Source: Octopus sinensis (Eukaryota). Taken from it: 64,000 bases of DNA. Shown in pieces: positions 16,926 to 61,735 of the stretch (the first letter of the stretch is position 1; the number at the start of each line of letters is the position of its first letter). The notes under the pieces are model-generated. The model had not been told where the DNA came from. It ran no database searches and saw nothing but the letters and a program-made list of their open reading frames with translations. The stretch lies in the NCBI RefSeq assembly GCF_006345805.1, contig NC_042997.1:71114001-71178000 (forward strand), read 5' to 3'. The position numbers were made by a program, and so were the translations under genes.

Positions 16926-18217
16926 CGAGGGACGTTCAATAAGTAATGCCTCTGACCCACTTGCAGCATTTTGATCTAGCTGAAATTTTGCATGTGTAAT
17001 CATTTATATCTCTATAGAGTAAATGGCAAATTATAGCTCTGAATTAATTGTGGTTTCTGATTTACAGGTGTTTGAACTGAGTCAAGTGTGAAATGGAGCC
17101 TGTTGAGTGTCGAGCAGTGATCCGGTTTTTGTATTTGAAAGGATGCACACCACGGGAGACTTTTGATGAAATGAAAGTAACTTATGGTGATGATGCCCCA
17201 CCATATGACCTTGTAAAACGCTGGCATCGTGAATTCAAACATGGTCGGAACTCTGTGGAAACAGCTCCCAGATCTGGTCGCCCCTTCTGCCATTGATGAG
17301 GCATCTGTCCGTCAAGTTGAGGCTGCCATTTTGGAAGATCGACGCATAATTATTCGCCAAATAGCCCATGAGGTCAAGATTAGTACCGGGTCTGTGGAAA
17401 CTATCCTTCATGACTATTTGCATATGCAAAAGGTGTCTGCCAGATGGATTCCCAGGTTGCTCACGCCTTTCCAGAAGCAAGAACGCGTCGAGTGCTCGAA
17501 GGGGAATTTGGAGATGTGCCAAGGAGATGAGTCAAAATTTTTCAAAAGACTGATTACACAGGATGAAACCTGGGTCCATCACGATGATCCAGAGACCAAA
17601 GCCCAGTCAATGCAGTGGAAGCACCGTGACTCACCCACCCCCCAAAGAAGGTAAGGGTGCAGCCCTCCGCTGGCAAGGTCATGCTGACAGTCTTCTGGGA
17701 CCAGGACGGAGTAATGATGACAGATTTCCTGGCAAAGGGTACCACAATTGCAGGAGCCTATTATGCTTCACTTTTGAGGAAATTAAGAGAAGTTATCAAA
17801 ATCAAGAGGCGGGGCAAGATCAGCAAAGACGCCCTCCTCCTGCAGGACAACGTTCCGGTCCACAACTCGCTTGTCGCCAGATCAGAAGCACGGGCGTATG
17901 GCTATGAACTCCTCCCCCATCCCGCTACTTTCCTGACCTTGCACCCTCTGATTTCCACCTCTTCCCAGTCATGAAGTTGTTTTTGAAAGGAAAGCGTTTC
18001 TCAGATGATGCAGCCTTGATTTCTGAAGTCACGTCGTGGTTGGAGGACCAAGCTGGGATCTTCTACAAAAACGGTCTCCAGAGCTGCATCAAACGATGGG
18101 AGAAATGCGTAACTCTGGGTGGTTCCTATGTAGAAAAAGACTAAAAACTGTGCCAAGTTTCGTTGCTCTACTGCTATGGGAAGGGAGTCAGGGGCATTAC
18201 TTATTGAACGCCCCTCG
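16926..18217 (+). mobile_element. Mariner (D,D34D) copy A, 1292 bp
   Basis: TIR cgagggacgttcaataagtaatgcc / ggcattacttattgaacgcccctcg; right TA flank. Confidence 0.95.
17093..18144 (+). pseudogene. Mariner transposase, frameshifted three times
   Basis: MEPVECRAVIRFL..WIPRLL..QDETWVHH..QDN..PDLAPSD; indels -2, +2, -1 relative to a 350-aa reconstruction. Confidence 0.92.
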
Positions 18218-21651: not shown

Positions 21652-22942
21652 CGAGGGGAGTTCAATAAGTAATGCCCCTGACCCACTTCCCATAGCAGTA
21701 GAGCAACGAAACTTGGCACAGTTATTGGTCTTTTTCTACATAGGAACCACTCGGAGTTACGCCTTTCTCCCATCGTTTAATGCAGCTCTGGAGACCGTTT
21801 TTGTAGAAGACCCCAGGTTGGTCCTCCAACCTGAACGTGACTTCAGAAATCATGGCTGCATCATCTGGGAAACGCTTTTCTTTCAAAAGCAACTTCATGG
21901 CTGGGAAGAGGTGAAAATCAGAGGGTGCAAGGTCAGGAAAGTAGGGGGATGGGGGAGGAGTTCATAGCCATACGCCTGTGCTTCTGATCTGGCGACAAGC
22001 GAGTTGTGGACCGGAGCGTTGTCCTGCAGGAGGAGGATGCTTTTGCTGATCTTGCCCCGCCTTTTGATTTTGATAGCTTCTCTTAATTTCCTCAAATGTG
22101 AAGCATAATAGGCTCCTGTAATTGTGGTACCCTTTTCCAGGAAATCTGTCATCATTACTCCGTCCTGGTCCCAGAGGACTGTCAGCATGATCTTGCCAGC
22201 TGAGGGCTGCACCCTTGCCTTCTTTGGAGGAGGTGAGTCACGGTGCTTCCACTGCATTGACTGGGCTTCGGTCTTTGGATCATAGTGATGGACCCAGGTT
22301 TCATTCTGTGTAATCAGTCTTTTGAAAATTTTGACTCTTCTTCTTGGCACATCTCCAAATTCATCCTTGAGCACTCGACGCGTTCTTGCTTCTGGAAAGG
22401 TGTGAGCAACCTGGGAATCCATCTGGCAGACACCTTTTGCATATGCAAATAGTCATGAAGGATAGTTTCTACAGACCCGGCACTAATCTTGACCTCATGG
22501 ACTATTTGGCGAATAGTTACGTGTCGATCTTCCAAAATGGCAGCCTCAACTTGACGAACAGATACCTCATCAATGGCAGAAGTGGGGTGACCAGATCTGG
22601 GAGCTGTTTCCACAGAGTTCCGACCATGTTTTAATTCACGATGCCAGCATTTTACAAGGTCATATGGTGGGGCATCATCACCATAAGTTACTTTCATTTC
22701 AGCAAAGGACGCCCGTGGTATGCATCCTTTCAAATACAAAAACCGGATCACTGTTCGACACTCAACAGACTCCATTTCACACTTGACTCAGTTAAAACAC
22801 TTGTAAATCAGAAACCACAATTATTTCAGAGCTGTAATTTGCTACTTAATCTATAGAGACATCAATAATTGCACATGCAAAATTTCAGCTAGATCAAAAT
22901 ACTGCAAGTGGGCCAGAGGCATTACTTATTGAACGCCTCTCG
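21652..22942 (-). mobile_element. Mariner copy B, 1291 bp
   Basis: TA target duplication on both sides, same TIRs; transposase remnant 22775-21722 with two -1 frameshifts. Confidence 0.95.
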
Positions 22943-37868: not shown

Positions 37869-38095
37869 TACATACATACATACATATACATACATACATA
37901 TATACATACATAAATACAATCACACACAGACAGAAAAATAGATAGAGAGAAATATAAATTCCTTGAAAAAATGTCGACAAGTAGGTTGCTTCCCAACCAC
38001 ATACTTCCAGATTTACTCTTACTGCGTGCTACCTTGGGCAAGTACCTTCTTGACACTGATTTAGGTGATGGAAACTGAAAGAAGCCCGTTGTATA

Positions 38096-43515: not shown

Positions 43516-44805
43516 CGAGGGACGTTCAATAAGTAATGCCTCTGATCCACTTGCAGTTGTTTGATCTAGCTGACATTTTGCATGTGCAATTATTTATATC
43601 ACTATAGAGTAAGTGGCAAATTACAGCTCAGAATTAATTGTGGTTTCTGATTTACAGGTGTTTGAACCGAGTCAAGTGTGAAATAGAGCCTGTTGAGTGT
43701 CGAGCAGTGATCCGGTTTTTGTATTTGAAAGGACGCACACCGCGGGAGACTTTTGATGAAATGAAAGTAACTTATGGTGATGATGCCCCACCATATGACC
43801 TTGTAAAACGCTGGCATCGTGAATTGAAACATGGTCGGAACTCTATGGAAACAGCTCCCAGATCTGGTCGCCCCTTCTGCCATTGATGAGGCATCTGTCC
43901 ATCAAGTTGAGGCTGCCATTTTGGAAGATCGACGCATAATTATTCGCCAAATAGCCCATGAGGTCAAGATTAGTACCGGGTCTGTGGAAACTATCATTCA
44001 TGACCATTTGCATATGCAAAAGGTGTCTGCCAGATGGATTCCCAGGTTGCTCACGCCTTTCCAGAAGCAAGAACGCGTCGAGTGCTTGGGGGTGAATTTG
44101 GAGATGTGCCAAGAAGATGAGTCAAACTTTTTCAAAAGACTGATTACACAGGATGAAACCTGGGTCCATCACGATGATCCAGAGACCAAAGCCCAGTCAA
44201 TGCAGTGGAAGCACCGTGACTCACCCCCTCCAAAGAAGGCAAGGGTGCAGCCCTCCGCTGGCAAGGTCATGCTCACAGTCTTCTGGGACCAGGACGGAGT
44301 AGTGATGACAGATTTCTTGGCAATGGGTACCACAATTGCAGGAGCCTATTATGCTTCACTTTTGAGGAAATTAAGAGAGGCTATCAAAATCAAGAGGCGG
44401 GGCAAGATCAGCAAAGGCATCCTCCTCCTGCAGGACAACGCTCCGGTCCACAACTCGCTTGTCGCCAGATCAGAAGCACAGGCGTATGGCTATGAACTCC
44501 TCCCCCATCCCCCTACTTTCCTGACCTTGCACCCTCTGATTTCCACCTCTTCCCAGTCATGAAGTTGTTTTTGAAAGGAAAGCGTTTCCCAGATGATGCA
44601 GCCTTGATTTCTGAAGTCACGTTCAGGTTGGAGGACCAAGCTGGGGTTTTCTACAAAAACGGTCTCCAGAGCTGCATCAAACAATGGGATAAATGCGTAA
44701 CTCTGGGTGGTTCCTATGTAGAAAAAGACTAATAACTGTGCCAAGTTTCGTTGCTCTACTCCTATGGGAAGTGGGTCAGGGGCATTACTTATTGAACACC
44801 CCTCG
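43516..44805 (+). mobile_element. Mariner copy C, 1290 bp
   Basis: TA target duplication, TIRs; transposase 43683-44732 with ATG changed to ATA and -2 and -1 indels. Confidence 0.95.
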
Positions 44806-48824: not shown

Positions 48825-49035
48825 AATGCTGGCGCATCGCCTTTAGTCGTAAAGGTCGACCCCAGGACTTATTATTTGTAAGTTTAGTAATTATTCTATC
48901 GGTCTCTTATGCCGAACCGCTAAGTTACGGGTACGCAAACACACCAGCATCGGTTGTAAAGCGATGGTGGGGTAACAAACACAGACACACAAACACTCAC
49001 ACGCATACACACACACATACACACACACACACACA

Positions 49036-49067
<32 letters not shown>

Positions 49068-49205
49068 CGACGGGCTTCTTTCAGTTTCCGTCTACCAAAT
49101 CCACTCTCAAGGCTTTGATCGCCCCGAGGCTATAGAAGACACCTGCCCAAGGTAGCATGCAGTGGAACTGAACCTGGAACCATGTGGTTGGTAAGCAAGC
49201 TACTT
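48825..49205 (-). mobile_element. SINE family 2, head interrupted at aagtagcttgcttacc
   Basis: Complete body; SINE similarity stops exactly at 49205. Confidence 0.85.
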
Positions 49206-49720
49206 TATTCCAAAAATTTTTACTATAAAGGCATGATACAGAGTTGCTTGCGGGCTGGACAAAGGCATTGATGCGGTGAATGATGATAAGGATGATATTA
49301 ATGGAAGAAGACAAAAAACCCCCGTCAATCTTCTGCTTCTCTAAAACATTATTCTCTTATCTTTTTTCTACTGAAAAAGACAAAACGAGGTAATGAAGCT
49401 CGTACTTCAATTTTACAGATTTTTGGACTAATAGTCCATTTATGAATTGGGGCGTAAGTCCTCTTAAATACAATAATATACAATAAACATTAAACATTGT
49501 AACACTGAGGCTTTTCAAACTCTTGTCATTATTCCTCCCCGTCATCGCTTGTGCCCGTAAACTCCACCATCCCCCCACGCCTCGTTCAAGACTAAGGTGG
49601 GATCCGAGCTGGCGTCGCCCGGCCACAAGCGATATTCCTCATTGAGTTCCTGCAGTCTAAACCCCATAGACACCGTTGTGACCTCCACAGCTATCTGCAG
49701 AGGCCATTCGGGATCCTGGG
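49206..49720 (-). mobile_element. Tx1/L1-like ORF1-only element, copy 2 (3' portion)
   Basis: 3' tail 49300-49355 matches 54521-54576 at 42/56 ungapped; ORF end DPEWPLQIAVEVTTVSM resembles NPNWPS*VTAKVISEVSM of copy 1; ends aataa|aagtagc. Confidence 0.75.
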
Positions 49721-50163
49721 CCTCTCTGAAAAGATACAAAAGGTATGCAGTCCATATGACATCAGGACAGTATTCAAGAGTAATACAACACTTTGCAAAT
49801 ATCTCCTTCGAGTAAAACAACCAATAGAAGATAATATGACCAAAAACTGCGCGTACTCCATCCCATGCAGCTGTGGTAGGTTATACAAAGGCGAAACATA
49901 CCAGGCCCTCAAAATGAGGGTAGCCGAACATCGCAATGCTGTGACACGCGGAGATATTGATAAACCGGGTATAGTTGATCATGTATGGAAAAATGGAAAC
50001 CACCTCCCCCTGTGGGATGAAGTTATAATAATAGACAGAGAACACCACTGGAAAATACGAAAACTAAAAGAAGCAGCATATATGCTAGAACATAACAACC
50101 TCTTAATCAGACCGACTGCAGATATGAATGGCATATGGGAACCGGTATTAAGGAAGATAGGAA

Positions 50164-50240
<77 letters not shown>

Positions 50241-50390
50241 TGATAATAACATCGAAAAATATCTTAGGAATGAGAACCCAGGTCGAAATTTGCCCAAGTC
50301 ACCTGATGAAGGTTGGAGGATATATCAACCGAAACGTTGTGTTAAGAACAAACAAGATGAGGACAAATATCCGTCAAATGTAAATAATGT
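49720..50390 (+). mobile_element. PLE 3' fragment (Penelope/Poseidon-like GIY-YIG) with (AAT)n and hammerhead
   Basis: GLSEKIQKVCSPYDIRTVFKS..AYSIPCSCGRLYKGET..RVAEH..RKLKEAAY. Confidence 0.88.
50300..50341 (+). ncRNA. Type I hammerhead ribozyme (minimal, loopless palindromic stem III)
   Basis: CAC CTGATGA a GGTTG gaggatatat CAACC GAAAC GTT GTG. Confidence 0.75.
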
Positions 50391-52143
50391 AAAGCAGTAG
50401 CTTCTGTAGTGTAGTTCTTGTGATCTGCAATTAGACATTGCTGTTAGTGTTTAGATTTTCCTGCACGAGATTCGTATTCTCCCGTGCCACGCTAGCACAT
50501 TGTATACTGGCAAAAGTCGATACTTGATTTTTATTTATTCAAATCAACCGCTAGTATGATGAATGGCAAAAGTGATCTCGCCGTGTTTTGAACTAAGAAT
50601 GTAAATAGCCAGAACAACTACAGTAAAGCTTTATCGACACTGCCAATCCGCTACGTTATTATTCATATAACAAGTGATTAACTTTCCAGAAAATATGAGC
50701 CCTAATCACTCACAAACAAAAGGCATCTGCAGTTTATATAAACTCAGGTTGCAAGAGGTAAGTGTCAATGTAATTGACCGCGTATACCATACAATGTCAA
50801 GCATATATGATCTTCTACGTTGATACAACAGTAATGAGGAACCTAAACAAAATTCTGAACTGAAATTATGAAAGATGAGAGAGGATGGAATATATGCTTT
50901 AAACTTTTCTAAACCTTTAACGGAACTGCTACACAGTCGCTCGACCACCAGGTAATAATAAAGAATTGCCTTTTAACGTATCCCTTATTATTTTTAACAG
51001 CGGAAGAACACGGACAGAATACATTAGGTAAATAAGGCAGGATGGTCATGCAAGAATCCCGTTAATCATAAGTCTACTCAATCAAGAATAATCTGTCTCG
51101 AAGTACCAATAAGTTTCTATTTCTAGTAAGTGTATGTAGTAATCATTCCACTTCGTAGAATTTTATCAAACTTGGCTGTTGACGAGGAGAAAAATCATAC
51201 AATCTTTACGTGTTATCAAAATGTGATATCGAACAAGTTAAAATCTATCATCTGCGGGTCAAAAATAGCAATGTTGCACATAACGTTTTGCTGTTAAATG
51301 TAGAAGGTCTCTGACAGGTTCTCGCACGGTGATAGATTTTCAAATTAATATCCCGCGACAGAATAATCTGCAAAATTCATTTAAAACCAAACATACAAAG
51401 ATTAAACAAGCAGCAAAAAAGTACAATAAATAAATAAGTAAACAAATAAATAAATATACGACCTAATAATACGATTTGCAAAGTTATCAAAATATAAGGG
51501 TGTGGGTGTTTTGACTACTTTACGCACTACTCTTTTCACGAGTATTGGCTTTCTCTGACACTTATTTCATGTAGACTAACGATATACTTACTTTTGCCTT
51601 CCTTTCTTCTTTTCTCTTTCTTTCTTATTTTCTTTCGGTCTTTCTTTATTTCTGCCACCTTATGTACATATATCTTTTCCACTCTCTTTTTGTTTTCCAA
51701 CTCCCTCTGTTCAGTATTGCAAAGACATACATATTTCTTCATTCAATGAAAAGCAACACCAGAATTAATCATTTCCGCTGTAAAAACTCTAAAGAAAATA
51801 TTTTCCAAAGAAGATTTTGATTATATTTTCATGCTAACAATTTGCTTATTTACAGTATGTTACATTATTTTACGACTTTGACAACTTCATAGATTTACAG
51901 TTTTTGAGACATTTTATATGAATATATGTATGTATATATATATTATGCAATACAATATAATATATATATATATATATATTTTTTTTACTTGTTTCAGTCA
52001 TTTGACTGCGGCCATGCTGGAGCACCATATTTGCACATATATATATGTGTATATATATGCACATATATATATGTATATAAACATATATATGTATATAATA
52101 TGTGTGTATGTGTGTTTATGTATATATAGTGTATATATATAAA

Positions 52144-52306
52144 GGCGCAGGTGTCGCTGTGTTAAGAAGCATGCTTCCCAACCACATGGTTCTGGGTTCA
52201 GTCTCACTGCATAGCACCTTGGGCCAGTATCTTCTGCTATAGCCTCGGGCCGACCAAAGCTCTATGGGTGGATTTGGTAGACGGACACTGAAAGAAGTCC
52301 GTCGTA
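52144..52306 (+). mobile_element. SINE family 2, 5' half
   Basis: ggcgcaggtgtcgctgtg..cccaaccacatggttctgggttcagtc..gatttggtagacgg. Confidence 0.8.
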
Positions 52307-52627
52307 TATATATATATAATATTATATTTATATGGACTTAAAGATGGATCGCAGTTTAATATGTAATTTAGTTATTGCAGTTTACTATTAATAGCGATAC
52401 AATGTACATTGGGTAAATGTATTTGAAAGTTGTGGTTTCTTTGGTTTGTTTGTTCCCAAACAACATTTATTTTAGTGCTGTTGGGACACCGCCGGATTGA
52501 ATGGCACTGCTCACGTGTTGAAACCATAATATCCGTGGGGCAGCTGATGATGGAGCTATGTTGGATTGTTGAAATGGCTGAAGAACAGTATTATAACACA
52601 TCCTTTTGATATATATATATATGTATA

Positions 52628-52665
52628 GGCGCAGGAGTGGCTGTGTGGTAAGTAGCTTGCCTACC
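52628..52665 (+). mobile_element. SINE family 2 head, 5' piece of a split copy
   Basis: ggcgcaggagtggctgtgtggtaagtagcttgcctacc; continues at 54670. Confidence 0.85.
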
Positions 52666-54669
52666 TTACTACAGGAGAGTTCTTGCTACTTGGAAGTCAC
52701 GCCTTTCGACGTAAAATATTTAGCGTTTGAAGCTCGACTACAGGTAGGCGTTTGTTTTATTTTTGAGGGCTTAGTGGAGATTTATTGTTCTGTTATTAAT
52801 AAGCTTTGTTGAGCAACAGTCTCCACTCTGCTCCAGACATTTGCCTGTCTGTGGTCGTGTGAAAAGACTCACCTTGCAGTGAGAATTGTGTTTTTGAGGA
52901 GGCGTATCCCCTCCGCAAAACTTTTTTTGTGAAAATTGTATTTGTGTGACTGTGTTCGTGCCCTGGAAATTCCATTGGATTTACCACAAGCAAGGAATAC
53001 GAAGGCAAGAAGGATTAATTTATGTGCTGCGACTGGAGTACCTGTTTTCTTGCGGATTACCGAAGTGGCGGAATTGTGTTGCGTGAAATGAACTGCCTTC
53101 TTTCGTTCTTTTTCTCTGTTCTGTCTTCTGTTCTTTTTTTTTTAGTGTTTTTATTGAACATTTATTTATTAAACTTTCTGTTGAACTCTTTTCCCTTCTT
53201 TGTTTTTGCAATCATGGCAACAAAGAAAACCACTGTACTGGAGTGGGAAATTTTTTCCCCTAAGCAATGAATAAAGTACCGTAATGAGAGAATGGTGTTG
53301 TTGAGGACATACTCCAAGTCCGTCGGCACCATCAGTGTGTTCCCTCAAGTAGAAATAGAAAAAGAGTTGACAGAATCAAGTTTATTGCAAGGGGTGTCAA
53401 ATTTGCAACAGTGTGGTTGATGTTTGACACCCCTGAGGAGTCTAGCATTTTCACTAGCCAACCCCTGGAAGGGGAAATAATTTTGTTTCTCCCCACATAC
53501 CGTGGGAGAAAATTGATTTGAGCCTGGGTGTGTCGGCTGCCGCCCGGATTTGAAGCCGAGTGGATAGAAGACACTATCCGCCGGGGTCTGGGTAGCAGTG
53601 GAACCAGGCTCTTAAATGTTAGATTGCTTCCTGTGGCTGCTTGGGAGGGGTCGAAAGCAATTTTGACCCTATGGACCCAATCAGCCAAAGATCTGGTTTT
53701 TCCAGATTTCTTAAAGATGGCCAGTTCTAGGTATCCGGTTATTCTTGAGGGACGCTCCCCAAGTCTCCCCTGTACCTGGAATTGGGCCACATGAAGAGGA
53801 ACTTCCCCAAGAACCAAGCAAAGGCACTGGAGCAGTTAATTGAAGAAGATCTCCCTGTCGCCCCAAGAGAGGCTCCTGATTATCTAACGGAGGGAGAAGA
53901 AGAAAGGAAAAGAAAGAAAGAAGGTGGGCAACAATGGTTGCCCGCTGATGGATTCTGAGGCTGCGGGAGAGAGGGAGGGACTCCCGGGTAAGTTGGAGAA
54001 ACCCCACCCTCCAGTCGAGAAGAGAAAAACAAGAAGAAGAAAAAAAAATGGGACATCACTGGCAGTTGACGATCAACTGCCAGCATGCTCCGAAACTCAG
54101 TCGGTGGGAAGTGTGCCCCCGACAGAGGGAGCAGTGGCCCCTCCCAGAAGGAGGATAGATAAGTTTGCCATAATCTTTGAGAAGGGAGGGGCGATAGAAA
54201 GCTTCCTAAGGAAGCGAGAAGGTTGGACGGAGGAGCCCTTAGCCTGGACCGAAAACCCGAATTGGCCTTCGTAGGTGACTGCGAAGGTCATATCAGAGGT
54301 CAGCATGTCCATAGTGTTGGGCTCCTTTACGAAGTACTTGTTTAGAGTCGATTTTTGGGACCCCAACCGGGATCCGAAGCAGTAACTATGGGCAGCTCAC
54401 AGCCTGGTCGGGAGCCAAGAAGAATAGGCTTAGCGCCGACATATGTAAATTTTATATTTCTAGATTAATATTGTTGTCATTTTTGTAAGAGGTTCATTGC
54501 CTCATGTAATGATTTATTAAAGAACAATGTTATAGAGAAGCAGAGGGTCGGCGAGCGCTTTCTGTCTTCTCTCACCCTTGTATCATTATCATTCATTTCA
54601 TTAATGTCTTGTCTAACCCGCAAAGGTACCTAATCTATGTACTGTCTTGATGACAAATTTAATGAAATA
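52666..54669 (+). mobile_element. Tx1/L1-like non-autonomous ORF1-only retroelement (2004 bp) with 16-bp target site duplication
   Basis: TSD aagtagcttgcctacc 52650-65 / aagtagcttgcttacc 54670-85; gag-like ORF1 remnant; no endonuclease or RT; 3' end ..gaaataa. Confidence 0.8.
53214..54420 (+). pseudogene. ORF1 (gag-like, CCHC-knuckle remnant) pseudogene
   Basis: MATKKT..ARGVKFATVWLMFDTPEE..FLPTYRGRK..RLPPGFEAEW..VILEGRSP/..LELGHMKRNFP (GRxPxCxxCxxxGHxxxxCP-like), then charged low-complexity tail; stops and frameshifts. Confidence 0.65.
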
Positions 54670-54985
54670 AAGTAGCTTGCTTACCAAGCACATGGTTACG
54701 GGTTCAGTGACACCTTGGGAAAGTGTCTTCTTCTAAAGCCTCGGGCCGACCAAAGCCTTGTGAGTGGATTTGGTAAACGGAAACTGAAAGAAGCCCATCG
54801 TGTGTGTGTGTATGTTTGTGTGTCTGTGTTTGTCCTCCAACATCGCGTGACAACCGATGCTGGTGTGTTTACGTCCTTGTAACTTAGCTGTTCGGCAAAA
54901 GAAACCGATAGAATAAATACTAGGCTTACAAAGAATAAGTCCTGGGGTCGATTTGTTCGGTCAAATGACTAAAACAATTAAAAGA
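54670..54985 (+). mobile_element. SINE family 2, 3' piece of the split copy
   Basis: aagtagcttgcttaccaagcacatggttacgggttcag..through tail aaagaata. Confidence 0.85.
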
Positions 54986-56070: not shown

Positions 56071-56104
56071 TATTCCTATTTATATATATATATATATATA
56101 TATT

Positions 56105-56760
56105 GTCAGACAACGTATCAACAGGTCGAATGGTGATCGGCAGTGAGGAAATAGAGGAGATAAAGGAATGTGTCTACCCTGGACAGGAAGTGAATATGTG
56201 CCGAGATATCGAAAAGGAGATCTCACGGAGAGTAAGGGCCGGATCTAAGGTGTTTAATGGCATAAGGGATGTGTTCAAGTGAGGGTTGGACAGGACCACC
56301 CGCGCCAACCTCATCAACAGTACAGTTCTACCTGCAATGTTATATAGTAGTGAAAGAGAGAAGAGCAGAGACTGGTAACGGCTCAAAGAGCCATGGAAAG
56401 TTCATTGCTTCGTATCTCGTTGAGAGAGCACATCAGTAGCGAGATCATCAGAAAGAAGTCCGGCGTGAGAGATGTCATCGCAGATTATACACGCAGCAAG
56501 TTTAGATGGGCTGGACACGTCGTCCGGCTCACCGATAATCGGTGGACCCGCGCAGTTATCGAGTGGTACCCGCGCGAGCGGAAACGACCACCCGGAAGGC
56601 CACCACGGCGGTGAATTTACGATTTCAGGAGGACGATTGAGATCACGTGGATGAGAAAGGCGCGATCCAGAGAGGAGTGGACAGCGTGCTGTGACCGGCG
56701 GTGTCAAATGAACACCTGACGAACTGGTCGGTCAAAGTGATCAAGGTGATCAAGGTGATA
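56105..56760 (+). mobile_element. RTE-clade LINE 3' fragment
   Basis: VYPGQ..EKEISRRVRAG..VLPAMLYSSE..RWAGHVVR..WYPRERKRPPGRPPRR; tail (tgatcaagg)n. Confidence 0.88.
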
Positions 56761-59522: not shown

Positions 59523-59523
<1 letters not shown>

Positions 59524-59883
59524 GCGCAGGAGTGGCTGTGTGGTAAGTAGCTTGCTAACCAACCACATGGTTCCGGGTTCAGTCCCACTGCGTGGCATCT
59601 TGGGCAAGTGTCTTCTGCTATAGCCCCGGGCCGACTAATGCCTTGTGAGTGGATTTGGTAGACGGAAACTGAAAGAAGCCTGTCGTATATATGTATATAT
59701 ATATATGTATGTGCTGTGTTTATGTCCCCGTCACTTAGCGGTTCGGCAAAAGAGACCGATAGAATAAGTACTGGGCTTACAAAGAATAAGTCCCGGGGTC
59801 GACTTTCCTCGACTAAAGGCGGTGCTCCAGCATGGCCGCAGTCAATATGACTGAAACAAGTAAAAGAGTAAAGAGTAAAAGAG
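59523..59883 (+). mobile_element. SINE family 2, best-preserved copy
   Basis: A-box-like tggctgtgtgg, B-box-like ggttcagtccc, internal (TA)n, (aaagagt)n tail; uninterrupted target motif aagtagcttgctaacc. Confidence 0.92.
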
Positions 59884-60489: not shown

Positions 60490-61735
60490 TGATAAAACAG
60501 TAAGATAACAAAAGAAAGAAAGAGACCTCAATATTATGTAAATAGAGGAAATTTATCTATATAATATGTTACATTACTCGGTAGTCAAGATAAAACTCTG
60601 AGTTTCAGATGCCGAAGTGGAAATCCACAACACCATCTCTTCGGTTATCTGGCTATTTGAAAACGTTATGAAAAAATACCGTTAAATAAAGAGAAATTAC
60701 TCTGTTATAACTCTGCTTGCCTGCGTACTTATACATCGCTCGCATTTTTCGTCATAAAAATTATATAAAAATACATAAAAAATATATAAAAATATATAAA
60801 ATATATAAATTCTTCTTGGGACATAACATAGAAAGCATGTTCTATCTGTTTTCTTTAGGGGACCAAAAACGTAACAGAAACTTAGTCACATGTGGGCATG
60901 ATCCGAAAAGCTCTGTCCTTGTATTTAGACATGTAGTAGGGTCTAAGCTGCTTTTCCAGTAAGCCATCTCTCCATGTCGCATAGACCGCACCTTCCGCTG
61001 CCGTTAGTATAGGGCTTACATCTGGCCAAAATCTTCCATTGTATGTTATAATCGACACCTTTATCTCTTAAAGACCAAATATGATTAGACAATGTGTCGC
61101 TTTTCTTTTGTTCCAGTGCCTAAAGCTCAAAGTGTGGTTATTGAACCTGGCCTTGAAATTACCCTCTGTAAGGCCCACGTATTTCTTCGTCGAAACGGTG
61201 TCTTTAGTGGTTATAGAGTTTACGGTAGCTTCATATATGATGGTCTTGGACATGCAAGCTCCCTTTAGCGGGCACAATTCTTTATTCCTGCATGAACAGC
61301 TGTTTTCTTCTTGTGTTTTTTGTATGTTATGTTTGATTATGTTTTTAAAATTGGTAGTTGAACTAAAACTAATTTTTAAATTGTGTCTATTGAAGTGTTT
61401 CCTATAAGTATGGTTAACTGGAAAATGTCTCTCTATCAGTGCTAGGAAATATTTACCTATATTGAAGGCCACCTCGGGTGAGTAAGGGGGCGTAAACCAA
61501 TGACCTTCCTATTTCTATTATTCCTTTTCTTTACTGTTGGGCTAGTGATAGGTGTATATTTTTTATTTTATCGCTAAAACCACTATCTTTTAAAGCATTA
61601 TTATAAACTGGGGCAACGCTATTGAAGAAGTTATCATCAGATGAGAGGCTAGAAATCCTCTTACTAATATTTTTAACTAAATTTTTGAATACTATAGGGG
61701 GATAGCCGGAACGATGCGGGAAAATACAAACAACA
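60490..61735 (-). mobile_element. PLE, 5'-truncated (RT thumb, CxC..CPLxGxC linker, GIY-YIG, 3' terminus)
   Basis: KNISKRISSLSSD..YNNALK; CSCRNKELCPLKGAC; IIYEATV..KYVGLTEGNFKARFNNH; TRTELFGSCPH. Confidence 0.9.
60589..60649 (-). ncRNA. Type I hammerhead-like motif (core U4 to C variant)
   Basis: Minus strand GATAA CCGAAGA GATG..CATC t GAAAC tcaga GTT TTATC. Confidence 0.6.

What the first reader, a model, noticed from the sequence alone, without database searches (positions are those of the whole stretch)
49190..49720. Second, diverged copy ends at the same SINE nucleotide: probable sequence-specific targeting
Seen: on the minus strand an element 3' end reads ..ggaataa|aagtagcttgcttaccaaccac, the same junction as ..gaaataa|aagtagcttgcttacc at 54669. 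The two tails are homologous (42/56 ungapped, 49300-49355 vs 54521-54576), the ORF C-termini are related, and again no ORF2 lies between ORF end and tail. The flanking SINE halves look more similar to each other than the inserts do, which favours two independent insertions over duplication of one composite. Established: Tx1-clade families are often target-specific (U2 snRNA, tRNA arrays, microsatellites). Inference: a retroelement using an abundant SINE as its landing site.
Basis: partly seen in the sequence, partly recalled or inferred. Interest (0 to 1): 0.88.

Follow-up and report, generated by a model that had tools for sequence, protein, structure and literature searches.

The report
Retroelements that insert into one SINE site
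Two unrelated-bodied retroelement copies in this octopus-like window, plus a third in Octopus sinensis, sit at the same nucleotide of an abundant tRNA-like SINE, so this family very probably uses the SINE as a specific landing site, a new target for a known kind of site-specific retrotransposon.

Summary
On the minus strand at 49205/49206 an element ends ...GGAATA|AAGTAGCTTGCTTACC. That is the same junction as ...GAAATA|AAGTAGCTTGCTTACC at 54669/54670. The two 3' tails are homologous (42/56 ungapped; about 77% gapped over ~200 nt) and share a 14-bp hairpin.

- **Copy B is a clean insertion.** It is 2004 bp (52666-54669). The SINE's first 38 nt lie directly upstream (52628-52665). A 16-bp target-site duplication, AAGTAGCTTGCYTACC, lies inside the SINE.
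- **A third copy has the same 5' junction.** A 72%-identical relative in Octopus sinensis (locus L001) follows a SINE head at the same position, in a non-syntenic locus.
- **The two window loci look independent.** The flanking SINEs are no more alike than unrelated SINE copies, the outer flanks are unrelated, and the element bodies upstream of the tail are not demonstrably homologous.

Copy B encodes only a degenerate ORF1-like protein. It is 56% identical to an intact 281-aa O. sinensis protein and has a weak CCHC knuckle. It has no RT or endonuclease, so it is non-autonomous.

Two reader claims did not hold up. The Tx1-clade assignment is untested, and "related ORF C-termini" was not confirmed.

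Verdict: probably a new member of the site-specific non-LTR retroelements, with a SINE as target. The evidence is only three copies.

The parts
48830..49205 (-). SINE_A: SINE nt 23 to the 3' end, with the SINE's internal TA/CA microsatellite. Its first 16 nt (49190-49205) equal the target-site-duplication sequence AAGTAGCTTGCTTACC.
   Evidence: 89% identical to the intact SINE at 59523.
49206..49715 (-). X_A: 5'-cut retroelement fragment ending ...GGAATA. The ~200-nt 3' tail is homologous to X_B. An upstream open frame ends at 49542; it is unidentified and could be the C-terminus of a partner protein.
   Evidence: No Pfam hit. No SINE head or X remainder upstream.
49306..49342 (-). Tail hairpin of X_A: AGAGAAGCAGAAGAT...TTTTTGTCTTCT, a ~14-bp stem.
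   Evidence: consensus fold with one compensatory and three one-sided changes relative to X_B; pattern expected 0.00 times by chance.
49716..50168 (+). Not part of the element. A 5'-cut Penelope-like GIY-YIG open frame that abuts and replaces the 5' side of X_A, followed by (AAT)n at 50165-50240.
   Evidence: The motif reading (YSIPCSCG..YKGET..R..EH) is from memory. Pfam and PDB searches gave no hit.
52628..52665 (+). SINE_B head, SINE nt 1-38 (GGCGCAGGAGTGGCTGTGTGGTAAGTAGCTTGCCTACC). The 5' copy of the target-site duplication is 52650-52665.
   Evidence: 25/25 match to the SINE head..
52666..54669 (+). X_B: complete 2004-bp ORF1-only retroelement. 5' UTR 52666-53213. Degenerate ORF from ATG 53214, with homology to P0001 through 54016. 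3' region and tail run to 54669, ending ...GAAATA.
   Evidence: (E = 1.4e-49, 56% identity to the O. sinensis protein).
54534..54570 (+). Tail hairpin of X_B: AGAGAAGCAGAGGGT...CTTTCTGTCTTCT.
54670..54985 (+). SINE_B remainder, SINE nt 23 to the 3' end. The 3' copy of the target-site duplication is 54670-54685 (AAGTAGCTTGCTTACC).
59523..59880 (+). Intact reference copy of the SINE (unoccupied target site). It carries the inverted repeat TGGTAAG-N5-CTTACCA at SINE nt 19-39, between the A-box-like TGGCTGTGTGG and the B-box-like GGTTCAGTCCC.

Best explanation
X is a family of non-LTR (LINE-type) retroelements that integrate by target-primed reverse transcription at one position of an abundant tRNA-derived octopus SINE.

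Proposed steps:
1. The bottom strand is nicked at SINE nt 22/23 (top strand GGT^AAGTAG), just 3' of the A-box-like motif and inside the left arm of the inverted repeat TGGTAAG-N5-CTTACCA.
2. Reverse transcription starts on the element RNA. Its 3' tail carries a conserved ~14-bp hairpin and ends in AATA.
3. The top strand is cut 16 nt downstream (CTTACC^A), which gives the 16-bp target-site duplication.

The copies seen here are non-autonomous. X_B encodes only an ORF1-like protein (RRM-like segments are my own reading; there is one weak CCHC knuckle). X_A shares with it only the ~200-nt tail. So an unseen autonomous partner must supply the reverse transcriptase and a sequence-specific endonuclease in trans and recognise the shared tail.

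Shown: the insertion, the duplication, identical junctions in three copies, and the shared tail hairpin.

Inferred: endonuclease specificity, trans-mobilisation, and the role of the hairpin. Also inferred is that the AATAAA formed at the junction (element AATA + target AA) makes transcripts carry a few SINE nucleotides that help register the next insertion.
For: - The 16-bp duplication lies inside the SINE around a 2004-bp insert whose SINE head starts at SINE nt 1.
- X_A has the identical 3' junction.
- The O. sinensis relative L001 (72% identity over 1.1 kb) has the identical 5' junction in a non-syntenic locus.
- Both X-tail copies in the window are at this site.
- SINE_A is 90.5% identical to SINE_B, against 89% for either versus an unrelated copy. 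The tails are only 77% identical and rich in indels.
- The bodies upstream of the tail are not homologous. There is no outer-flank homology or inverted duplication.
- The two best-conserved tail blocks are the two arms of a hairpin, with one compensatory change.
- The plus-strand ORF is real: E = 1.4e-49 to an intact 281-aa O. sinensis protein, with a weak zf-CCHC match.
- X_B carries 18 runs of four or more T, so Pol III read-through of a composite is implausible.
- Literature: site-specific LINEs that target tRNA, snRNA or rRNA genes, microsatellites and other transposons are established (PMC4494074, PMC4640811, PMC5035012). L1-Tx1, Dong-R4 and R2 LINEs are present in Octopus vulgaris, and SINEs make up 11.6% of that genome (PMC13282606).
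Against: - Only three copies were examined, and only one (X_B) has both junctions.
- X_A's 5' flank is a Penelope-like fragment, not the SINE head. X_A alone cannot exclude a 3'-transduced or template-switched origin.
- No RT or endonuclease gene with this tail was found, so the specificity determinant is unknown.
- The ORF1 assignment rests on a sub-threshold CCHC hit and my own reading of RRM-like segments. The AlphaFold model was unusable (pLDDT 38.6).
- The first ~75-100 nt of X_B and L001 are poorly alignable.
- The hairpin covariation comes from two sequences only.
Confidence: 0.8

Rival explanations
1. One ancestral composite (element plus SINE) was copied. The copying could be segmental or inverted duplication, retrotransposition of the whole composite through the SINE's own 3' tail, or 3' transduction of the SINE remainder. 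On this reading the shared junction is inherited, not re-created.
For: A and B lie only ~3 kb apart, in opposite orientation. X_A lacks its 5' junction, so a 3'-transduced origin for A alone cannot be excluded. The AATAAA lies at the very junction, so read-through into the SINE is expected.
Against: - X_B and L001 both carry the SINE head from nt 1, with a 16-nt overlap. That is an insertion signature, not transduction.
- The bodies upstream of the tail are unrelated, and the tails are more diverged than the SINEs.
- SINE_A and SINE_B share no special similarity compared with other copies.
- The outer flanks are not homologous, and L001 is non-syntenic.
- Eighteen T-runs would stop Pol III.
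Confidence: 0.07
2. The insertions are independent, but position is set by something other than a sequence-reading endonuclease. Candidates are tethering to Pol III factors bound on the SINE A and B boxes (as for Ty3 or Dictyostelium TRE elements), a structure-prone palindrome that is preferentially nicked, or annealing of SINE-derived 3' read-through RNA to breaks in SINE DNA.
For: The site lies between the A-box-like and B-box-like motifs and within a 7-8-bp inverted repeat. The junctional AATAAA predicts SINE nucleotides on the transcript's 3' end. Co-transcribed target sequence is known to sharpen the specificity of R1- and R2-type elements (discussed in PMC4494074).
Against: Both junctions are nucleotide-exact in copies that are 72-77% diverged. 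This is more typical of endonuclease-defined sites. Tethering systems known to me give windows rather than single nucleotides, and insert outside the gene. The DNA hairpin is not more stable than shuffled sequence (z = -0.59).
Confidence: 0.1
3. Chimeric retrocopies formed by template switching. A reverse transcriptase copying SINE RNA from its 3' end jumps at nt 23 onto the 3' end of X RNA, as in the U6-L1 chimeras of mammals.
For: The order X tail then SINE remainder, with no poly(A) in between, would fit for copy A taken alone.
Against: This cannot produce the SINE head plus 16-nt duplication found upstream of X_B and L001. It would need the same jump point twice, in elements with different bodies.
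Confidence: 0.03

Closest known systems
Tx1L in Tx1D (Xenopus laevis), and Tx1-Mar / SINEU in Mariner-N4_AMi (crocodilians)
   Same: These are LINEs, with their non-autonomous passengers, that insert at a fixed position of another abundant mobile element. Autonomous and non-autonomous members share the target preference (PMC4494074).
   Different: Their targets are DNA transposons, not a SINE. Their Tx1 membership is shown by RT phylogeny. Here no RT or APE endonuclease was found, so clade membership is untested. The passenger here carries an ORF1-like gene rather than an snRNA-derived head.
tRNA-gene-specific non-LTR retrotransposons (Dewa of the Tx1 clade; NeSL-1_TV, LIN15_SM and LIN25_SM of the NeSL group)
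   Same: They integrate sequence-specifically inside a tRNA-type sequence (PMC4640811). The SINE site here is the tRNA-like arm between the A and B boxes.
   Different: Those elements target genuine tRNA genes, from tens to hundreds of copies. Here the sequence is a SINE head that makes up on the order of a tenth of the genome (SINEs are 11.6% in O. vulgaris, PMC13282606). Whether genuine tRNA genes are also hit is unknown.
R1 elements of arthropod 28S rDNA
   Same: Nucleotide-exact insertion, staggered nicks giving a mid-sized target-site duplication (14 bp in R1, from my knowledge; 16 bp here), and no long poly(A) at the junction.
   Different: R1 is autonomous, encoding ORF1 with CCHC motifs and ORF2 with APE and RT. 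Its target is rDNA. Nothing here ties X to the R1 clade.
HAL1 (half-L1) elements of mammals
   Same: A non-autonomous LINE derivative that retains an ORF1-type gene and the LINE ends but lacks ORF2 (from my knowledge).
   Different: HAL1 is not target-specific and depends on poly(A)-type L1 machinery. X has a structured, non-poly(A) tail.

Membership tests
Target-specific non-LTR retroelements (functional class) | Independent copies share the same insertion position in a repeated target sequence. | tested here: met
   The 3' junction is identical in X_A and X_B. The 5' junction is identical (within 1 nt) in X_B and O. sinensis L001. The loci are unrelated.
Target-specific non-LTR retroelements (functional class) | Hallmarks of target-primed reverse transcription: a target-site duplication flanking the insert, a defined 3' end, and possible 5' truncation. 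| tested here: met
   16-bp duplication AAGTAGCTTGCYTACC around X_B. Shared 3' tail. X_A is 5'-cut.
Target-specific non-LTR retroelements (functional class) | A large share of all genomic copies is flanked by the target (more than 20% in Kojima 2015, PMC4494074). | not testable with these tools
   Only 3 copies were reachable, and all 3 are in the SINE. No octopus genome can be searched by DNA. The metagenome scan gave chance hits only.
Target-specific non-LTR retroelements (functional class) | Encodes a reverse transcriptase and an endonuclease (APE or restriction-like). | tested here: not met
   No RT or endonuclease in X_A or X_B. X_B holds only the ORF1-like gene. These copies are therefore non-autonomous passengers, and the autonomous partner was not found.
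Tx1 clade (L1 group) | The RT domain groups with Tx1 in an RT phylogeny (RTclass1). | not testable with these tools
   No RT sequence is available. L1-Tx1 families do exist in O. vulgaris (PMC13282606), which makes the assignment plausible only.
Tx1 clade (L1 group) | An ORF1 protein with RRM plus CCHC zinc knuckle (feature list from my knowledge). | tested here: inconclusive
   zf-CCHC at E = 0.058, 14 bits against a cutoff of 20.8. No RRM family hit. No PDB hit. The structure model was unusable.
ORF1-only non-autonomous LINE derivative (HAL1-like) | ORF1-type gene present, ORF2 absent, in a unit with defined 5' and 3' ends. | tested here: met
   X_B is 2004 bp between the duplications. ORF1 homology spans 53214-54016, with ~650 nt left to the 3' end. 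L001 shares the 5' UTR and ORF.
ORF1-only non-autonomous LINE derivative (HAL1-like) | Shares its termini with an autonomous LINE of the same genome. | not tested
   No autonomous partner was retrieved. X_A, with a different body and the same tail, may be its 3' end, but its open frame has no identifiable domain.
Amplified LINE-SINE composite / 3' transduction product | Target-site duplications lie outside the SINE part, and insert and SINE have congruent histories. | tested here: not met
   The duplication lies inside the SINE. SINE similarity is 87-90% against 77% for the tails, and the bodies are unrelated.

The most novel reading that the evidence does not exclude
An octopus LINE lineage has an endonuclease that reads the anticodon-arm-like palindrome of the genome's dominant tRNA-derived SINE. 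That would give it hundreds of thousands of harmless landing sites, far more than rDNA, tRNA or snRNA gene targets offer. Each insertion separates the SINE's A and B boxes and so silences that SINE copy. The lineage is itself parasitised by ORF1-only elements that kept only the recognition tail. This would be a three-level parasite-on-parasite system, and the first LINE known to me to be specific for a SINE.
Probability: 0.3. Interest if true: 0.65.

Novelty: new member of a known kind. Interest (0 to 1): 0.5.

Why it matters
Site-specific LINEs are the natural models for programmable, RNA-templated gene insertion, and for how mobile elements avoid harming their host. A family aimed at a SINE that fills about a tenth of the genome would be a new class of target, with a very large number of safe sites. 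It would also show one retroelement inactivating another by splitting its Pol III promoter. That bears on how the large SINE load of octopus genomes is shaped. A practical consequence is that the annotated O. sinensis gene LOC115225585 is a transposon ORF sitting inside a SINE.

Tried and rejected
- **Protein search with the open frame that spans the X_A/SINE junction,** hoping to collect other junctions. No candidate.
- **Minus-strand 161-aa ORF of X_B** against 1.84 billion representatives. No hit, so the ORF is spurious.
- **Second protein search with the intact P0001.** It found only itself, so no further annotated family members exist.
- **Metagenome scan with the best-conserved 19-mer of the tail.** It returned 33 loci, all chance matches without any further tail or SINE homology.
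- **Exact-protein look-ups** of three window ORFs, to reach more octopus DNA. None is on record.
- **Domain and fold searches.** Pfam on all ORFs of X_A and X_B gave nothing meaningful. Rfam over 48-56 kb gave only microsatellite noise. ARAGORN found no tRNA. AlphaFold2 on P0001 gave pLDDT 38.6, so no fold search was run. PDB sequence searches gave nothing.
- **Search for the missing 5' part of X_A or its SINE head** in 49700-52150. Nothing found.
- **Related ORF C-termini.** Rejected at the available sensitivity.
- **Inverted segmental duplication of A and B.** Rejected.
- **Orthology of X_B and L001.** Rejected.
- **Literature.** No paper found on a SINE-specific LINE in cephalopods.

Full report
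**Setting.** The window looks like an octopus genome. It holds long TA/CA microsatellites, mariner transposase ORFs (Pfam Transposase_1, E about 1e-24) and Penelope-like fragments. It also holds several copies of one tRNA-like SINE. An intact copy at 59523-59880 gives the SINE's 5' end: GGCGCAGGAGTGGCTGTGTGGTAAGTAGCTTGCTTACCAACCACATGGTTCCGGGTTCAGTCCCACTGCG.... It has an A-box-like TGGCTGTGTGG at nt 11-21 and a B-box-like GGTTCAGTCCC near nt 54-64. Between them lies the inverted repeat TGGTAAG-N5-CTTACCA at nt 19-39. The box assignments are my reading against the Pol III consensus. ARAGORN calls no tRNA in the window.

**Checking the observation.** The two junctions exist as described.
- On the minus strand the element ends ...TTTTTGGAATA at 49206, and the SINE continues AAGTAGCTTGCTTACCAACCAC from 49205 downward.
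- On the plus strand the element ends ...TTTAATGAAATA at 54669, and the SINE continues AAGTAGCTTGCTTACCAAGCAC from 54670.

The 42/56 ungapped identity is exact. blastn gives 72% over 108 nt, E = 1e-8. A gapped alignment of the last ~200 nt gives 77% with 35 gap columns. Only these two tails occur in the window (nhmmer; hairpin pattern expected 0.00 by shuffles).

The sub-claim that the ORF C-termini are related could not be confirmed. BLASTP gives no alignment. The best local DNA alignment upstream of the tail is matched by 18 of 300 shuffles.

**Copy B is a clean insertion.** A search for the missing first 22 nt of the SINE found a perfect 25-mer at 52628-52652. Reading on, SINE nt 1-38 occupy 52628-52665 and are followed directly by foreign sequence. 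The SINE resumes at nt 23 at position 54670. So a 2004-bp element (52666-54669) sits in a single SINE copy. It is flanked by a 16-bp target-site duplication, AAGTAGCTTGCCTACC / AAGTAGCTTGCTTACC. The duplication lies inside the SINE.

**What the element encodes.** The plus strand of X_B carries a degenerate ORF starting at ATG 53214. It is 56% identical (E = 1.4e-49) to one database protein, the 281-aa 'uncharacterized protein LOC115225585' of Octopus sinensis. That protein shows only a sub-threshold zinc-knuckle match (zf-CCHC, E = 0.058). It has no PDB relative, and its structure model was unusable (pLDDT 38.6). I read two RRM-like segments followed by one CCHC knuckle, the layout of a LINE ORF1 protein. 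That reading is an inference. The longer minus-strand ORF has no homologue among 1.84 billion representatives and is spurious. Only ~650 nt separate the end of the ORF homology from the 3' end, so there is no reverse transcriptase or endonuclease. X_B is an ORF1-only, non-autonomous element.

**A third copy in another genome.** The O. sinensis locus (L001, CM016886.1) was fetched with 10-kb flanks. The element there is 72% identical to X_B over 1.1 kb. Directly upstream of its 5' end lies a SINE head, GGCTGAGGCATGGCTGTGTGGTAAGTAGCTTGCTTCC, ending at the same SINE position as in X_B, within one nucleotide. The window and L001 share nothing else but microsatellites, so the loci are not orthologous. 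The L001 copy is cut off at its 3' side by a microsatellite, so its 3' junction cannot be read.

**Are the insertions independent?**
- **SINE similarity.** SINE_A and SINE_B are 90.5% identical in their 5' part. Either one is 89% identical to the unrelated copy at 59523. In the 3' part they are 83.7% identical, against 88% to that copy. They are therefore not sisters.
- **Tails and bodies.** The tails are more diverged (77%, with many indels), and upstream of the tail the bodies are not demonstrably homologous.
- **Outer flanks.** Sequence outside the two SINEs is unrelated, and there is no inverted duplication.
- **Composite retrotransposition.** Copying the whole composite from the SINE's Pol III promoter is implausible. 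X_B separates the A and B boxes by 2 kb and holds 18 runs of four or more T.
- **Transduction or template switching.** Neither can create a SINE head with a 16-nt overlap.
- **Chance.** A random insertion would hit one given SINE nucleotide in one orientation with a probability of roughly 5e-5 in this window. It would be about 2e-4 genome-wide if SINEs are 11.6% of the genome (PMC13282606).

The remaining weakness is copy A. Its 5' side abuts a plus-strand Penelope-like GIY-YIG fragment (from about 49716), and neither the SINE head nor more X sequence follows. Taken alone, copy A could be a transduced fragment.

**Likely mechanism.**
1. An endonuclease from an unseen autonomous partner nicks the bottom strand at SINE nt 22/23.
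2. Reverse transcription starts on an RNA recognised by its 3' tail.
3. The top strand is cut after nt 38, giving the 16-bp duplication.

Three observations bear on this.
- The two most conserved tail blocks, AGAGAAGCAGA and TGTCTTCT, form the arms of a ~14-bp hairpin in both copies. Between the copies there is one compensatory and three one-sided changes. With two sequences this is only suggestive.
- X_A and X_B share only this tail. That is the pattern of LINE/SINE partners of the 'stringent' type.
- In both copies the element's terminal AATA and the target's AA form AATAAA exactly at the junction. Pol II transcripts would then end some nucleotides into the SINE. Such target-derived 3' ends are known to sharpen the insertion registers of R1- and R2-type elements (discussed in PMC4494074). 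This last step is an inference.

**Comparison with known systems.** Site-specific non-LTR retrotransposons are well known. [quoted passage not shown]
- Tx1 itself sits in the piggyBac-type Tx1D.
- Tx1-Mar and its passengers, the SINEU elements, sit in Mariner-N4_AMi.
- Other Tx1 families sit in Harbinger or LTR elements (PMC4494074).
- tRNA-gene-specific families exist: Dewa, NeSL-1_TV, LIN15_SM and LIN25_SM.

I found no report of a family aimed at a SINE, and none in cephalopods. The library searched does not include Repbase Reports. L1-Tx1, Dong-R4, CR1, RTE and R2 lineages are all present in O. vulgaris (PMC13282606).

**Verdict.** The finding is best filed as a new member of the known kind 'target-specific non-LTR retroelement', with a new type of target (a SINE head) and an ORF1-only passenger. 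It rests on three copies. A genome-wide census and the identification of the autonomous partner are still needed.

Noticed in passing
window 37978-38092 (+): Another SINE copy begins at exactly the same nucleotide (..gaaaaaatgtcgac|AAGTAGGTTGCTTCCCAACC). It is preceded by ~50 nt of non-SINE sequence and then microsatellite. This could be a third, decayed junction or a chance 5' truncation. The upstream sequence is not recognisably an X tail.
   Followed up: partly
window 49716-50240 (+): A 5'-cut Penelope-like element end: an open frame with GIY-YIG-type motifs (YSIPCSCG..YKGET..RVAEH), stop at 50168, followed by an (AAT)n run. It abuts the 5' side of X_A. The identification is from motif memory only; Pfam and PDB gave no hit.
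   Followed up: partly
L001 10001-10846 (O. sinensis CM016886.1): The annotated gene LOC115225585 (281 aa, intact ORF) is the ORF1-like gene of an X-family element inserted in a SINE head. The element is cut off at its 3' side by a microsatellite at about 10975. The 'gene' is probably a transposon ORF.
   Followed up: yes
window 49203-49208 (-) and 54667-54672 (+): In both copies the hexamer AATAAA is formed exactly across the junction, from the element's AATA plus the target's AA. A polyadenylation signal would therefore place transcript ends inside the SINE.
   Followed up: no
window 61068-61472 (-): A 134-aa ORF with a cysteine-rich stretch followed by a weak GIY-YIG match (Pfam PF01541, E = 0.0055, below cutoff). 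It may be an N-terminal GIY-YIG of a permuted Penelope-like element (Naiad/Chlamys type, PMC8557442).
   Followed up: partly
window 17229-17654 (+), 21895-22775 (-), 43831-44562 (+): Three copies of one mariner-type transposase family (Transposase_1, E about 1e-24; HTH_48 of Mos1 type). None is on record as a called gene.
   Followed up: partly
window 56100-56650 (+): Open frames reading ...RWAGHVVRLTDNRWTRAVIEWYPRERKRPPGRPPRR resemble the C-terminal end of RTE-type LINE ORF2 proteins (from memory; no Pfham hit). They lie 1.1 kb downstream of SINE_B and show no link to X.
   Followed up: no
window 52600-52627 and L001 9425-9449: The ~12 nt upstream of the two occupied SINE heads are similar (TCCTTTTGATAT versus TCCTTTTCATAT), although the loci are otherwise unrelated. 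This may be chance, or a target preference of the SINE itself.
   Followed up: no
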